From Obrimoposthia wandeli (Eukaryota), in assembly GCA_977020255.1 (NCBI GenBank), contig CDROCS010000506.1, positions 3,472,001-3,536,000 of the forward strand: 64,000 nucleotides of DNA. Reading direction: 5' to 3'. The position numbers and the translations under genes are program-made. The notes under the pieces were generated by a model, which searched no databases, was not told the DNA's origin, and worked only from the letters and a program-made list of their open reading frames with translations. This document shows positions 46,309-51,481 of this stretch, one piece after another (within the stretch, counting starts at the first letter, position 1; every line of letters begins with the position of its first letter).

Positions 46309-47295
46309 GTGTGCATCCCTTTTTATTTCCCAAGATTAATTAAGGTGAATAAGATTGTGACTGTTGCTATATCCGAGGCTGATGTGAAATTGCCGCTTGA
46401 GTTTATTGATTTCTCTGCTGTTGCAGAAGATGCTTGTCGCTTGTTCCATGGTCGTGGCCACACGTATGCGGGCTTCGAGCACATCAACATTGATTGGTTG
46501 TCACCTGTTGCACTTATTACGTTATACAAAGAAGAAGAAAACGATTATTTGATGCTGCTAGCTGAAGCGCTGCAAGCACAACTTGGCCAGCAGTGTAAAA
46601 CAGTATTAGTGCAGTTCCGCTGTCGTGAACGTGCACCGACGTCATTGTTCCTTGGTGAAGAATGTAATCGTACCGAGATCACCGAAAATGGCATGACCTT
46701 CAACCTTGAGTTTGGTCGAGCGCAAAATACTGGTTTGTTCCTTGATATGGCCAATGGCCGTCAGTGGGTTAAAGAGCAGTCTGAGAATGCCAACGTATTA
46801 AACTTGTTCTCTTATACTTGTGCGTTTTCTGTTGCTGCGTTAGCGGGTGGGGCAGACAAGGTGATGAACGTTGACCTTAGCCGTACTTCACTGACGATGG
46901 GACGTGATAACCACCGCAGTAATGGTCATGATCTTAAGAAAGTTAAATTTGAAGGTGTCGATATCTTTAAATCATATGGCCGTTTACGTAAACATGGTCC
47001 TTATGATCTGTTGATCTCGGATCCACCGTCGTTTCAAAAAGGCAGTGTTGATATTAAGCGTGATTACAGCAAGATCATTAAACGTATTCCGGAACTGATG
47101 AAGCCGGGTGGTAAAGTGATGTTATGTTTGAACGCACCAGAGCTAGGTGAGCAGTTCTTGTTTGATAATGTTGCCGAGCATTGCCCTGATTGTGTGTTCC
47201 AAGAACAATTGCCAACACCGGCAGTGTTTAAAGAAGCTGAAGCAGGCAAAGGCCTTAAAGTCTTAATCTTTATTTACTCGCCAAAAGCAGAGTAA
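46309..47295 (+). CDS. Class I SAM-dependent methyltransferase (RlmI/RlmK C-terminal-like)
   Basis: NTGLFLDM, VLNLFSYTCAFSVAA and DPPSFQK. The true start may be slightly downstream. Confidence 0.8.
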   Translation: MCIPFYFPRLIKVNKIVTVAISEADVKLPLEFIDFSAVAEDACRLFHGRGHTYAGFEHINIDWLSPVALITLYKEEENDYLMLLAEALQAQLGQQCKTVLVQFRCRERAPTSLFLGEECNRTEITENGMTFNLEFGRAQNTGLFLDMANGRQWVKEQSENANVLNLFSYTCAFSVAALAGGADKVMNVDLSRTSLTMGRDNHRSNGHDLKKVKFEGVDIFKSYGRLRKHGPYDLLISDPPSFQKGSVDIKRDYSKIIKRIPELMKPGGKVMLCLNAPELGEQFLFDNVAEHCPDCVFQEQLPTPAVFKEAEAGKGLKVLIFIYSPKAE

Positions 47296-47649
47296 TTGAT
47301 ATAGCCTGTTGTTTTAGTCATTACGCTAAAACAGCAGGCTAAATTAGTCATCTTTACGTTAATAAGTGGTCATCCCACATAAAAACTCGCCCTCAACGTT
47401 ATTTCTTATATTCCTTTTGTATTCAAATCCCCTTCAATATTCGTGAATATTTATCAATTTAGCATCAAAACCCCTCTATATTACTTTTTGATATAACTTA
47501 TATTAAGTTGTTCTATTTTGTTTATTATCGTTCAGTTTTAGTCAAGCAGTTGTGTTTTGAGGTCGTGACTCCTTCCTTATATCGGTAGTTTGCTTTCATA
47601 TGAAGAGCGCATCAGCAAAATGTTGATAAATAATTACAGAATGGATTTA

Positions 47650-47663
47650 TTGACTAGGATCAA
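47650..47663 (+). promoter_or_regulatory. FNR-like box upstream of 37-aa ORF
   Basis: TTGAC-TAGG-ATCAA, one mismatch. Confidence 0.35.
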
Positions 47664-47820
47664 TTTTTTTGCCGAGAACGACAAATATTGCAGACTTAAA
47701 ATGCTGTGTTAGGATTAATACATGGACTGGGCACAAGGTTGTTCCAGGGAAGTGTGATAAGCGGGTTATCGATTATCGGCATATTTTAACGAAGTACTGT
47801 TTAGTACTATTAAGGTGGTT

Positions 47821-47934
47821 ATGATGGACTATAATGAAAACGATTTATCGTATTATCAACTTCAAGACGAATTGAAACAAGAAATGGAAGCGGAATTACG
47901 TGACCAACTTGATGATGAAGCAGGCGTAAACTAA
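47821..47934 (+). CDS. Small acidic protein, 37 aa (not in ORF track)
   Basis: Hand translation: MMDYNENDLSYYQLQDELKQEMEAELRDQLDDEAGVN. TAAGGTGG RBS upstream and its own terminator downstream. Confidence 0.65.
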   Translation: MMDYNENDLSYYQLQDELKQEMEAELRDQLDDEAGVN

Positions 47935-47974
47935 TCTACACGATTAAATAGATTAGCGACAACAACTGTTAATT

Positions 47975-48001
47975 AAAAAAGCCTCAATTGAGGCTTTTTT
48001 T
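47975..48001 (+). terminator. Intrinsic terminator (bidirectional)
   Basis: AAAAAAGCCTCAATTGAGGCTTTTTTT. Confidence 0.85.
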
Positions 48002-48036
48002 ATGCCTGAATTTTACTTCACTTTTAAATCATCACG

Positions 48037-48214
48037 TTATGCACAGGCTAGGATTATTCATGTATATACTCACTTAGTTGCGTTTCGCTTGTGTATAACT
48101 TTAAGTATTAAACAGGTAATGTGGACTAAATGTATTATATTTACCGCTCGTTTTGTGAATAATAGACTTTTTTGTTAGGTTATCCACAGATTCTGTGGAT
48201 AAACATGTGTGTTA
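48037..48214. promoter_or_regulatory. DnaA-box cluster with DARS-like core
   Basis: TTATGCACA 48037, TGTGTATAA 48090, TGTGAATAA 48154, and core TTATCCACA(48180)-GATTC-TGTGGATAA(48194)-ACA-TGTGTGTTA(48206). Confidence 0.8.
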
Positions 48215-48554
48215 ACTTAAGGGTGTGTCGTAAGTCTTTGTATTAAAATGATTTTATATCATTGCATTTATATTTCGTGAAAAATCAAGAAAAAATTAGA
48301 AATTAAATACGACTAAAGACTGAATAATTTAGTTATTTTTGTTATATAAAATAGGCGTCCCAGGACGCTTCAACGGGCTCTTATATATTTGAGATACAGA
48401 GGTTGAATATTCAGTTTTAATCGCCCTGAGCGCTATTGTGGAGATTGTATGTAAACCAATGTCTATGTTACGCAAATAAGTGTCAACAACCTTGGGTAAC
48501 GTAACGCTATGCCATATATTAATTGTGAATTAATTAATGAGGAAGAGCCTAAAT

Positions 48555-49256
48555 ATGAATAGCAGCAAATTATTTCAGCAATTACTAAGCGAAGGCAAAC
48601 AACTATTCGAGAAAAATAGCGGTAAATTAAACAGCCAAAATATCAATGTTGAATCAGCCAAAAAAATGGCATCAGGATTTGGTGGTGGGCTCGCTTCAGG
48701 CGGTATCTTAGGCACTCTTTTAGGTAGCAAAAAAGGCCGTGATTATGCAGGTAAAGCGGCGAAAGTAGGTGGTGTAGCTGCATTGGGTGGCGCGGCTTAT
48801 TATGCGTATCAAAAATGGCAATCAGATCAGAAGGGGACGACAACGCCTCAAGTATCGGCACAGGTAAACTCGACATCATTCTCAAAGCAGGCTGAATTGA
48901 CTTCAGAACCTGTATTACAGTGTAATACCGACTTGTTATTGGACGCTATGATTGGTGCAGCGAGAGCAGACGGACACATCGATGCTGAAGAACATCAGGC
49001 TATTATTGCCAAATTAAACGCCTTGGGTATTGATGCGGGTACTAATCAACTGATTGAAACTGCACTAGCGAAGCCTTTAGATCCCGCTGCGTTAGCGGCA
49101 AGAATTACCTCGACAGAACAAGCCTGTGAAGTGTATTTAATTTCGTATGCGGTGATCGATGTTGACCACTTTATGGAGAAAGCGTATCTGCAGGAGTTAG
49201 AGAAACATTTGAACCTACCGCCAGCGTTAATTCAAGAGTTGAAAAAGCAGCTTTAG
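48555..49256 (+). CDS. DUF533 / YebE-like (TerB-fold) inner-membrane-associated protein
   Basis: GGLASGGILGTLLGSKKGR, GGVAALG..AY.AYQKW and AMIGAARADGHID. Confidence 0.8.
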   Translation: MNSSKLFQQLLSEGKQLFEKNSGKLNSQNINVESAKKMASGFGGGLASGGILGTLLGSKKGRDYAGKAAKVGGVAALGGAAYYAYQKWQSDQKGTTTPQVSAQVNSTSFSKQAELTSEPVLQCNTDLLLDAMIGAARADGHIDAEEHQAIIAKLNALGIDAGTNQLIETALAKPLDPAALAARITSTEQACEVYLISYAVIDVDHFMEKAYLQELEKHLNLPPALIQELKKQL

Positions 49257-49336: not shown

Positions 49337-51481
49337 CTAGTTGCTTAATTGCTTAGCTTGAATTGCTGTTAGAGCGATTGTGTAAACGATATCGTCTACT
49401 AATGCGCCACGTGATAAATCATTTACTGGTTTACGCATGCCTTGCAGCATTGGACCAATAGAGATTAGGTTTGCAGAACGCTGTACCGCTTTGTAAGTTG
49501 TGTTACCAGTATTAAGATCTGGGAATACAAATACAGTTGCTTTACCAGCAACAGGGCTGTTTGGCGCTTTGCTTTTCGCTACATTTTCCATGATAGCTGC
49601 ATCGTACTGTAGAGGACCATCAATGATCAAATCAGGACGACGTTCTTGAGCAAGTTTCGTTGCTTCACGTACTTTCTCTACATCACTACCTTGGCCAGAT
49701 GAACCAGTTGAGTAAGAGATCATAGCAACGCGAGGGTCGATACCGAATGCTTTAGCAGAATCCGCAGATTGAATTGCGATGTCAGCTAGTTGAGAAGCAT
49801 CTGGGTCTGGGTTAATTGCACAATCACCGTACACTAACACTTGATCAGGTAGCAACATGAAGAAGATCGAAGACACTAGGTTTGAACCCGGTGCTGTTTT
49901 GATCAACTGTAGTGCTGGACGGATTGTGTTTGCTGTCGTATGAACGGCACCAGATACAAGACCATCAACTTCAGACTGTTCTAACATCATAGTCGCAAGA
50001 ACAACACTATCTTGTAGTTGTTCACGTGCTACTACTTCAGTCAGACCTTTCGCTTTACGCAGTTCAACCATAGGTGCAACATATTTTTCAAGACATGTTA
50101 CTGGATCTATGATTTCAACACCGTCAGAAAGAATGATACCTTGGCTTTCTGCAACACGTCTAATTTCAGCTGGGTTACCAATCAATACTGGTGTCGCGAT
50201 ACCGCGTTCAGCACAGATGTTAGCCGCTTCAATTGTACGTGGCTCTTCGCCTTCAGGTAATACAACACGTTTCTTCGCTTGACGCGCTAATTCAGTTAAC
50301 TGGTAACGGAATGCAGGCGGTGATAAACGACGAGTACGTTGTGTACCAACAGTTAACGTTTCAATCCATTGCTTGTCGATATGACTTGCGATGTATTCTT
50401 GAACCGCTTCGATGCGTTGTTTGTCATCTGCAGGGATATCAAGATTGAAGTTTTGAAGCGTTAATGCAGTCTGCCAAGTGTTCGTAGGCGTTAGCATGAT
50501 TGGTAAACCAGTCGCCATTGCTTGTTGGCAAAGTTTTAATACACTTGCGTCTGGACGAGCATCACCAGTTAACAGTAATGCACCGATTTTAACGCCGTTC
50601 ATTGCAGCAAGACATGCAGCAACAATAACGTCAGCACGATCGCCAGAAGTAACTAATAAGCCACCTGGACGGAAGTGCTCAAGCATGTTCGGGATAGAAC
50701 GTGCACAGAAAGTGATACCCACTAGACGACGTTCTTCGATGTCGCCTTCGTTTAGGATCTCAGCACCTAAGTGTTTAGCTAGATCTTTTGCACGTGGTGC
50801 AATTAGCTCAGCGCTCCATGGGATACAACCCAGGATAGGCATTGGGCTTTTGCCAAATACTTGTAGCACTTCTAGGTTATGGCTAGCATTACCTGTGTTT
50901 GCTTCAAACATTTCTGCAAGATCTGGACGGCTACGACCAGCTTCATCAAGTGGTGCGCCAACTTTGTTGATCACACAACCAATGATGTTTTTGTTTTTGC
51001 TGCCGCCGAAGTTAGAACAAGCGATCTCTAAACGATCTTTAAGTTGTTCTGAAGAATCTGTGCCTGGGTTAGTCACAAATACCATTTCAGCGTCAAGTGC
51101 TTTAGCGATGTTGTAGTTAACATCGTTAGCAAATGGTTGTTTTGATGTTGGTACTAGACCTTCAACAACAACGATTTCAGCGTCAACCATGTGCGATTCA
51201 AAACGCTCAACGATATCTTCAAGAAGTACGTCAGTTTTACCAGCGCCGATTAATTTTTCAGCGTGTAATAAAGTGAACGGCGTTGCAGGTGATGCATTCG
51301 TTCCTTGACGGATAATTTCAGTTGATAACTCAGGACCTTTTTCGCCTTGGCGAGGTTGAGCAACAGGTTTGAAAAAGTTAACGTTTAGGCCGTTGCGTTC
51401 AAACGCACGAACCATACCTAGACTAACAGAAGTTACGCCTACGCCTACGCCAACTGGGATAAGCATTATAGTGCGAGCCAC
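49337..51481 (-). CDS. pta: Phosphate acetyltransferase
   Basis: AAA_26, DRTGG and PTA_PTB domains; [18 protein letters not shown]. Confidence 0.97.

What the first reader, a model, noticed from the sequence alone, without database searches (positions are those of the whole stretch)
48037..48214. DnaA-box cluster with a DARS-like three-box core in an unannotated 1.2-kb gap
Seen in sequence: five TTATNCACA-class boxes fall within about 170 bp (48037+, 48090-, 48154-, 48180+, 48194-). A rough estimate at 40% GC gives about 0.01 such boxes expected in that span. The last two boxes plus a degenerate third read TTATCCACA-N5-TGTGGATAA-N3-TGTGTGTTA. Established knowledge: E. coli DARS1/DARS2 have a core of box I, an oppositely oriented box II and a box III, and they regenerate ATP-DnaA. 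I recall DARS1 as TTATCCACT-ATTCC-TGTGGATAA-CCA-TGTGTATTA, with the same N5 and N3 spacing; this recall should be checked. Inference: this is a replication-timing element outside oriC, in a context (methyltransferase/small ORF and DUF533) unlike uvrB (DARS1) or mutH (DARS2). Three extra upstream boxes could add DnaA titration or a datA-like role. I could not find a consensus IHF site by eye.
Basis: partly seen in the sequence, partly recalled or inferred. Interest (0 to 1): 0.85.

Follow-up and report, generated by a model that had tools for sequence, protein, structure and literature searches.

The report
Conserved DARS-type DnaA-box module in Moritella
A non-coding stretch of this Moritella chromosome has three binding sites for the replication initiator DnaA, spaced exactly as in the E. 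coli DARS elements that recharge DnaA, and its conservation across the genus whatever genes lie beside it makes it a good candidate replication-timing element at a locus not reported before.

Summary
Five of the window's nine TTATNCACA boxes lie within 166 bp (48037-48202). The triad at 48180-48214 reads TTATCCACA-N5-TGTGGATAA-N3-TGTGTGTTA.

In 13 distinct Moritella-lineage sequences, 62-98% identical over 390 bp, boxes I and II never change. Boxes 48037 and 48090 vary only at the consensus N. Spacer letters drift but spacer lengths do not. One claimed box (48154) is specific to this genome. An unnoticed degenerate box (48120) and a 43-bp AT-rich block (48280-48322) are conserved.

The module stays intact where the downstream gene is DUF533, a MASE6-GGDEF gene or a DUF533 remnant, and where an IS3 element lies upstream. 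It is therefore not merely a DUF533 operator.

No conserved IHF or Fis consensus is present, and no uvrB, mutH or origin genes are nearby.

The best reading is a DARS-type DnaA-reactivating element, a new member of a known kind. The activity itself is untested.

Side result: the same perfect core occurs in at least 120 Gamma- and Betaproteobacterial genomes. About half of these carry a DARS2-like IHF site and a distal DnaA box.

First readers of this scan flagged other DARS-like triads elsewhere in this genome. I did not check them.

The parts
48037..48045 (+). Upstream DnaA box, TTATGCACA
   Evidence: Exact consensus match. In 13 Moritella-lineage sequences, 8 of 9 positions are invariant and the only variable letter is the consensus N.
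48090..48098 (-). Upstream DnaA box, TTATACACA (TGTGTATAA on the + strand), followed by an invariant CTTT
   Evidence: 8 of 9 positions are invariant and only the N position varies.
48120..48128 (-). Degenerate DnaA box, TAGTCCACA (TGTGGACTA on the + strand), with two mismatches to the consensus
Evidence: Read. 8 of 9 positions are invariant across 13 sequences.
48154..48162 (-). DnaA box TTATTCACA, present only in this genome
   Evidence: Exact match in the window, but only 4 of 9 positions are invariant and no relative has a consensus box here.
48180..48188 (+). Core box I, TTATCCACA
   Evidence: 9 of 9 positions are invariant in 13 sequences. It lies head-to-head with box II across a 5-bp spacer, as in DARS1.
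48194..48202 (-). Core box II, TTATCCACA (TGTGGATAA on the + strand)
   Evidence: 9 of 9 positions are invariant. It is identical to box II of E. coli DARS1.
48206..48214 (-). Core box III, TAACACACA (TGTGTGTTA on the + strand), 3 bp after box II and in the same orientation
   Evidence: 7 of 9 positions are invariant (TGTGnGTnA). E. coli DARS1 has TGTGTATTA at the same offset.
48280..48322 (.). Invariant AT-rich block with phased A-tracts and an AATCAA motif, at +100 to +142 from box I
   Evidence: 35 of 45 positions are invariant in 13 sequences, against 17 of 62 in the stretch before it. It is single copy in the window. It sits at a fixed distance from the core in all 19 Moritella-lineage loci and is absent from the 203 other loci. 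It occupies the position that IBS1-2 holds in E. coli DARS2, +93 to +121. Its function is inferred only.
48340..48351 (.). Conserved TGTTATATAAAA, which ends the conserved module
   Evidence: 9 of 13 positions are invariant. Homology between loci with different downstream genes breaks shortly after it.
47975..48002 (+). Hairpin terminator of the upstream 37-aa ORF (AGCCTC-AATT-GAGGCT with flanking A and T runs), the left boundary of the module
   Evidence: Read. An equivalent hairpin is present in relatives.
48492..48520 (+). Probable DUF533 promoter, TTGGGT-17-TATATT (context, not part of the module)
   Evidence: The hexamers are conserved in alignment A1. The equivalent site in L129 was found by the scan. 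It lies about 280 bp downstream of box III.
48555..49256 (+). DUF533 / TerB-family gene (context)
   Evidence: Pfam PF04391, E = 7.6e-58. Homologues are 233 aa long, which sets the start at 48555.

Best explanation
This is a self-contained, non-coding DnaA-binding module of the DARS (DnaA-reactivating sequence) type, spanning about 48030-48350. By analogy with E. coli DARS1, two ADP-DnaA molecules would bind boxes I and II head-to-head across the 5-bp spacer. A third, on box III, would stabilise them head-to-tail. The complex would then expel ADP, and the released apo-DnaA would rebind ATP, raising the pool of initiation-competent ATP-DnaA. The three conserved upstream boxes (48037, 48090, 48120) and the invariant AT-rich block at +100 to +142 are proposed accessory parts. 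The boxes could nucleate further DnaA oligomers for feedback or titration. The block could be a bending or nucleoid-protein site, at the place where DARS2 has its IHF site. Shown here: the sequence architecture, its conservation and its independence from the neighbouring genes. Inferred: DnaA binding, nucleotide exchange and every accessory role.
For: (1) Orientation and N5/N3 spacing are identical to DARS1 as read from E. coli MG1655, with 29 of 35 letters shared. Relatives that carry the CCA spacer share 20 of the 21 letters of TGTGGATAACCATGTGTATTA.
(2) Five consensus boxes lie within 166 bp, where about 0.011 are expected.
(3) Phylogenetic footprint in 13 distinct sequences that are 62-98% identical: 49 of 54 box positions are invariant against 26 of 131 other positions (Fisher 6e-20). 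Boxes 48037 and 48090 vary only at the consensus N. The seven core variants differ only in spacer letters and two box III letters, never in spacing.
(4) The module is intact with DUF533, with a MASE6-GGDEF gene, or with a DUF533 remnant plus an integrase island downstream, and with an IS3 element upstream.
(5) It is not coding: ORF 48002-48178 carries stop codons in relatives. No Rfam family matches the gap.
(6) The same perfect core occurs in at least 120 other proteobacterial genomes, where about 0.07 are expected by chance, in varied gene contexts. This argues for a function carried by the DNA itself.
(7) The literature states that the box spacing is critical for DARS1 activity and is conserved in DARS1, DARS2 and predicted DARS candidates (PMC6868365).
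Against: No biochemical or genetic evidence exists for this element. Nucleotide exchange has been shown only for the E. coli elements. Box III has two mismatches to the consensus. No conserved IHF site (at most 1 mismatch) or Fis consensus is present, so the DARS2 activation mode is not supported. The locus is neither of the two known DARS positions. The AT-rich block and the following hairpins could belong to an unrecognised promoter or transcript, in which case the boxes could be its operators. I could not examine the uvrB and mutH upstream regions of Moritella, nor its DnaA residues.
Confidence: 0.6

Rival explanations
1. The boxes are operators through which DnaA controls transcription of a neighbouring or unannotated transcript, for example one that starts near the AT-rich block or at the minus-strand promoter-like site overlapping box I. 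On this reading they have no role in nucleotide exchange.
For: A weak minus-strand promoter-like site, TGGATA-16-TATTAT, overlaps box I. The AT-rich block and TGTTATATAAAA are strongly conserved and are followed by GC hairpins. Several relatives have a TTATTCACA box at +190 and terminator-like hairpins on the plus strand. From my own knowledge, the DARS1 boxes of E. coli also lie in the uvrB promoter region.
Against: The probable DUF533 promoter lies about 280 bp downstream of box III. The module persists when DUF533 is replaced or reduced to a remnant. No consistent sigma-70 promoter emerges across orthologues. Between the boxes only the boxes themselves are conserved, so there is no conserved RNA body. 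The hairpin inside the block has uncompensated mismatches. No Rfam family matches.
Confidence: 0.15
2. This is a datA-like or purely titrating DnaA sink. The seven boxes would bind DnaA and lower its free or ATP-bound pool, a negative rather than positive effect on initiation.
For: There are six conserved boxes within 180 bp. One IHF-like site with a single mismatch, AATCATCACGTTA at 48027-48039, overlaps the first box in 3 of 6 aligned loci.
Against: The head-to-head N5 pair plus an N3 third box is the geometry described for DARS cores, not for datA (PMC6868365, PMC11724364). No IHF consensus is conserved across the lineage. The invariance of the spacing, not just of box number, points to a specific DnaA-DnaA geometry.
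Confidence: 0.15
3. This is an origin-like element, either a secondary origin or a relic of one.
For: It is a cluster of DnaA boxes with adjacent AT-rich DNA.
Against: GC skew stays positive across the whole window with no switch. The window holds no dnaA, dnaN, mnmG or rsmG. The module contains no GATC. I know of no head-to-head N5 arrangement in oriC DnaA-oligomerisation regions.
Confidence: 0.03
4. The boxes are a chance accumulation with no function.
For: None beyond the AT-richness of the gap.
Against: About 0.011 boxes are expected against 5 observed. Conservation is specific to the boxes, at 6e-20. The core pattern has 22 specified bases.
Confidence: 0.01

Closest known systems
E. coli DARS1 (bioD-uvrB intergenic region)
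   Same: It has three boxes with I and II head-to-head across 5 bp and III 3 bp after II in the same orientation. Box II is identical, and 29 of 35 core letters are shared. It also shares the uncommon (A/C)CA-TGTGT..TTA form of spacer 2 and box III. No consensus IHF or Fis site lies next to the core.
   Different: The locus differs: methyltransferase/37-aa ORF on one side and DUF533/pta on the other, not uvrB. Box I is a perfect consensus here (one mismatch in E. coli), while box III has two mismatches (one in E. coli). Three further conserved boxes lie 52-143 bp upstream, and an invariant AT-rich block lies at +100 to +142; I did not see counterparts in the E. coli DARS1 sequence I read. Activity is untested.
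E. coli DARS2 (rppH-mutH intergenic region)
   Same: The core geometry is the same, with 24 of 35 letters shared with L002:3136-3170. It is an extended architecture with accessory DNA on the box III side. The Moritella AT-rich block lies where IBS1-2 lies (+93 to +121). Several Moritella relatives have a consensus box at +190, where DARS2 has box V at +211.
   Different: No conserved IHF consensus (at most 1 mismatch) and no Fis consensus are present. The core boxes are strong here and weak in DARS2. The window itself has no box near +200. The locus differs.
DARS candidates predicted in other bacteria (V. cholerae, Shewanella denitrificans, Aeromonas hydrophila and others)
   Same: These are also predicted from conservation of the three-box core and its spacing (PMC6868365, PMC4245941, PMC8682772, PMC6090056).
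   Different: The published candidates I could read about are described as lying at positions like those in E. coli (uvrB, mutH). This one does not. Fujimitsu et al. 2009, which lists the candidates, was not available to me, so I cannot exclude that a Moritella site is in it.
E. coli datA
   Same: It is a non-coding cluster of DnaA boxes outside oriC that affects the DnaA nucleotide state.
   Different: datA works with an essential IHF site and promotes ATP hydrolysis (PMC11724364). Here the geometry is that of a DARS core and no IHF consensus is conserved.

Membership tests
DARS (DnaA-reactivating sequence) | Three 9-mer DnaA boxes, with I and II in opposite orientation separated by 5 bp, and III 3 bp after II in the orientation of II | tested here: met
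   48180-48214 was read against DARS1 (L001:1609-1643) and DARS2 (L002:3136-3170) from E. coli MG1655.
DARS (DnaA-reactivating sequence) | Box spacing conserved among related genomes | tested here: met
   Seven core variants in 13 distinct sequences keep N5 and N3. Boxes I and II are invariant.
DARS (DnaA-reactivating sequence) | Non-coding chromosomal site outside oriC | tested here: met
   ORF 48002-48178 is not conserved. No origin-linked genes are in the window. GC skew does not switch.
DARS (DnaA-reactivating sequence) | Promotes ADP dissociation from ADP-DnaA in vitro | not testable with these tools
   This needs a filter-binding assay with labelled ADP-DnaA.
DARS (DnaA-reactivating sequence) | Stimulates initiation in multicopy; deletion delays or desynchronises initiation | not testable with these tools
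   This needs flow cytometry or ori/ter measurements.
DARS1 orthologue | Located upstream of uvrB | tested here: not met
   The flanking genes are Methyltrans_SAM, a 37-aa ORF, DUF533 and pta. No UvrB match was found in any Moritella-lineage locus.
DARS2 type | IHF sites (IBS1-2) and Fis sites (FBS2-3) flanking the core | tested here: not met
   No conserved WATCAANNNNTTR (at most 1 mismatch) and no GNNYANNNNNTRNNC in six aligned loci. The same scan finds IBS1-2 in E. coli DARS2. Non-consensus binding cannot be excluded.
DARS2 type | Located between rppH and mutH | tested here: not met
   No MutH, RppH or PtsP match was found in the Moritella-lineage loci recovered by the metagenome scan. Pfam and NCBIfam name the five genes around the module, and none is mutH, rppH or ptsP. 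The rest of the window was not searched for them.
datA | Essential IHF site among head-to-tail DnaA boxes | tested here: not met
   Only a one-mismatch IHF-like site, at 48027-48039, is present, and only in 3 of 6 loci.
oriC | Origin-linked genes, GC-skew switch, GATC clusters | tested here: not met

The most novel reading that the evidence does not exclude
The Moritella element would be a third architectural class of DARS. It would combine a DARS1-type strong core, sited at a locus that is neither uvrB nor mutH, with its own conserved accessory set: three upstream DnaA boxes and an invariant bent or protein-binding AT-rich block in place of the IHF/Fis sites. More broadly, DARS-type cores, many with a DARS2-like IHF site and distal box, would be an ancient and positionally mobile class of replication-control DNA across Gamma- and Betaproteobacteria, not a feature of relatives of E. 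coli.
Probability: 0.3. Interest if true: 0.65.

Novelty: new member of a known kind. Interest (0 to 1): 0.5.

Why it matters
DARS elements set the timing of chromosome replication in E. coli, yet they have been shown to work only there. A strongly conserved DARS-type core at a different locus, with different accessory DNA, in a cold- and deep-sea genus gives a clean natural variant. It can be used to ask which parts of a DARS are essential, how the elements are regulated without the IHF/Fis sites, and whether chromosomal position matters outside E. coli. The side result, the same core in more than 120 distant proteobacterial genomes, suggests that the system is much more widespread than the papers I could read indicate.

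Tried and rejected
- **Rfam.** Nothing above noise in 47200-48700. Nothing lies between the core and the distal box in 18 other loci.
- **IHF and Fis consensus scans.** No conserved site.
- **Sigma-70 scans.** In the window and three orthologues, only the DUF533 promoter is consistent. No promoter could be assigned to the AT-rich block.
- **RNA hairpin inside the AT-rich block (CAACTAAA...TTTAGTTG).** Rejected, because the 5' arm is invariant and the 3' arm carries uncompensated changes.
- **58-aa ORF at 48002-48178.** Rejected, because it has stop codons in relatives.
- **Genome-contig scan.** It therefore could not show whether Moritella has further cores at uvrB or mutH.
- **Fujimitsu et al. 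2009 (PMC2685538).** Not held.
- **My own error.** I first took the triad at L002:3452-3486 for the DARS2 core. The positions of IBS1-2, the PciI site and box V show that the core is at L002:3136-3170.
- **E. coli blastn of the gap.** Only trivial 38-bp hits.
- **DUF533 homologues at 55-65% identity without synteny (L126, L132).** They carry no boxes.
- **Earlier notes of this scan.** No note on this genome mentions uvrB or mutH.

Full report
**Observation**

The gap between the Methyltrans_SAM gene (46309-47295) and the DUF533 gene holds five exact TTATNCACA boxes, at 48037+, 48090-, 48154-, 48180+ and 48194-. The DUF533 ORF runs 48537-49256, with a probable start at 48555. The whole 64-kb window has nine such boxes, and dinucleotide shuffles give a mean of 4.4. 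The last two boxes and a third, weaker one read TTATCCACA-GATTC-TGTGGATAA-ACA-TGTGTGTTA at 48180-48214.

I fetched E. coli MG1655 and read DARS1 between bioD and uvrB. The two triads share orientation, the N5 and N3 spacing, and 29 of 35 letters.

**Context**

Pfam and NCBIfam name the neighbouring genes. They are an AI-2E transporter, a Methyltrans_SAM (RlmI/RlmK-like) methyltransferase, DUF533 (a TerB-family protein) and, convergent with it, pta. A 37-aa acidic ORF (47821-47934) with a hairpin terminator (47975-48002) lies just left of the cluster.

This agrees with the syntenic locus in Moritella sp. 24, whose DUF533 protein is 77% identical.

GC skew stays positive across the window. The window has no dnaA, dnaN, mnmG or rsmG, and the module has no GATC. 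This is not an origin.

**Conservation**

Through DUF533 homologues I fetched syntenic loci. An exhaustive metagenome scan for the core gave more. Together they give 13 distinct Moritella-lineage sequences of the 390 bp around the core, pairwise 62-98% identical with a median of 70%.

- Boxes I and II are invariant.
- Box III is TGTGnGTnA.
- Boxes 48037 and 48090 vary only at the N of the consensus.
- Box 48154 is not conserved (4 of 9).

Within 48030-48214, 49 of 54 box positions are invariant against 26 of 131 other positions (Fisher 6e-20). The sequences are related, so this p-value is only indicative. The seven core variants differ in spacer letters (GATTC, GAATC, TTTTC, ATTTC, AAATC; ACA or CCA) and in two box III letters, never in spacing. 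This is the pattern expected if selection acts on DnaA binding and on the geometry between the bound molecules. The 58-aa ORF over the upstream boxes is broken in relatives, and Rfam finds nothing.

**Independence from the neighbouring genes**

- The conserved promoter-like site for DUF533 (TTGGGT-17-TATATT, 48492-48520) lies about 280 bp beyond box III.
- In L216, L186 and L188 the gene after the module is a MASE6-GGDEF protein, not DUF533.
- In L176 and L148 only a frameshifted C-terminal remnant of DUF533 is left, followed by an integrase island.
- In Moritella sp. 24 an IS3 element sits about 150 bp to the left.

In all of these the boxes and the AT-rich block are intact. Homology breaks only after about +185. 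The module is therefore kept for its own sake.

**Accessory DNA**

A 43-bp AT-rich block lies at 48280-48322, which is +100 to +142 from box I. It reads AAAAATCAAGAAAAAATTAGAAATTAAATACGACTAAAGACTG, is nearly invariant, and is followed by TGTTATATAAAA. It is single copy in the window. It is present at a fixed distance in all 19 Moritella-lineage loci and absent from the 203 other loci held. It has two A-tracts 10-11 bp apart and an AATCAA motif. It matches neither the IHF nor the Fis consensus used for DARS2. A potential hairpin inside it shows uncompensated changes, so the constraint is on the sequence and not on an RNA fold.

Scanning E. coli DARS2 with the same script places its core at L002:3136-3170, IBS1-2 at +93 and +109, and box V at +211. 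This agrees with the published layout (PMC4245941, PMC11724364). The Moritella block thus sits where DARS2 has its IHF sites, and 7 of the 13 relatives carry a TTATTCACA box at +190. I take this as a hint of an extended architecture. What binds the block is unknown.

**Wider distribution**

About 0.07 are expected by chance. Nearly all are Gamma- or Betaproteobacteria, including Pseudomonas, Legionella, Lysobacterales, Woeseiaceae, Nitrosomonas and Rhodocyclaceae.

- The unconstrained part of box III is DnaA-box-like (TGTG[G/A]A..), and spacer 1 ends in C in 83%.
- None lies next to uvrB, mutH, rppH, bioD, DUF533 or pta.
- Contexts vary: PriA genes lie within 3.5 kb in 26 loci and are the nearest upstream gene in 14, and a radical-SAM gene (sometimes with rph) lies alongside in about 20.
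- 60 of 114 have an IHF consensus (at most 1 mismatch) at +90 to +147, against 7 of 118 in a mirrored control.
- 54 of 114 have a DnaA box at +180 to +226, against 0 of 118 in the control.
- Only 3 of the 208 other core loci fetched in both scans (the 120 here plus the 88 from the metagenome scan) are within 8 kb of mnmG or rsmG.

So DARS-core modules, often with DARS2-like accessories, are widespread and not syntenic. The Moritella form, with spacer (A/C)CA and box III TGTGT.TTA, is the minority form that E. coli DARS1 also has.

**Literature**

DARS1 and DARS2 share the three-box core. Boxes I and II release ADP through a head-to-head DnaA dimer, and box III stabilises it. [quoted passage not shown] DARS-like sequences were reported in V. 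cholerae at the E. coli-like positions (PMC6090056). DARS2 cores with IHF and Fis sites were reported in V. cholerae, Shewanella denitrificans and Aeromonas hydrophila, also at E. coli-like positions (PMC4245941 and its supplement; PMC8682772). I found nothing on Moritella or on this locus. The original 2009 paper was not available to me.

**Verdict**

I put 0.6 on true DARS function, 0.15 on a DnaA-controlled promoter, 0.15 on a titration or datA-like sink, and very little on an origin or on chance. It is a new member of a known kind at a new locus, with its own accessory elements.

Open points are the nucleotide-exchange activity, the role of the AT-rich block, and whether Moritella also has cores at uvrB or mutH. 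First-reader notes of this scan mention further DARS-like triads elsewhere in this genome (s1-241219, s1-211181, s1-250317). I could not check them.

Noticed in passing
L003-L122 (genome-contig loci): The perfect three-box core occurs in at least 120 Gamma- and Betaproteobacterial genomes, in non-syntenic contexts. PriA genes lie within 3.5 kb in 26 loci and are the nearest upstream gene in 14. About half also have an IHF consensus at +110 to +130 and a DnaA box at about +200, which is a DARS2-like layout (60/114 and 54/114, against 7/118 and 0/118 in mirrored controls).
   Followed up: partly
L002:3452-3486 (E. coli MG1655, rppH-mutH intergenic region): A second triad with the same N5/N3 spacing, TTATCCCAG-CTTTC-TGTGGATAA-CAT-GGTGTAAGA, lies 316 bp to the right of the DARS2 core (L002:3136-3170). 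It presumably falls in the dispensable right half of DARS2.
   Followed up: partly
window 47821-47934 (+): A 37-aa, very acidic ORF (MMDYNENDLSYYQLQDELKQ...) with its own hairpin terminator. Gene calls of 36-37 aa stand at the same place in L124, L125, L127 and L131. It has no Pfam or NCBIfam match.
   Followed up: partly
L216:3886-4884, L186, L188; L176:334-3890, L148; L123:1982-3327: The slot after the DnaA module is variable. It holds DUF533 in the window, a MASE6-GGDEF gene in some relatives, and a DUF533 remnant plus a phage-type integrase island in others. Moritella sp. 24 has an IS3-family element just upstream.
   Followed up: yes
window 48355-48368; L124:3821-3872: A GC hairpin right after the conserved TGTTATATAAAA reads as a minus-strand terminator in the window. 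One group of relatives instead has plus-strand terminator-like hairpins and a TTATTCACA box at +190. A short transcript or leader here is possible but unresolved.
   Followed up: partly
window 48449-48455: A conserved ATGTAAA motif lies about 40 bp upstream of the DUF533 promoter-like site. From memory, E. coli yebE (DUF533) is Cpx-regulated and CpxR sites contain GTAAA. This was not tested.
   Followed up: no
window 49337-51481 (-): A full-length pta gene (NF004167, 1044 bits). In Moritella sp. 24 ackA follows it. DUF533 and pta are convergent.
   Followed up: no
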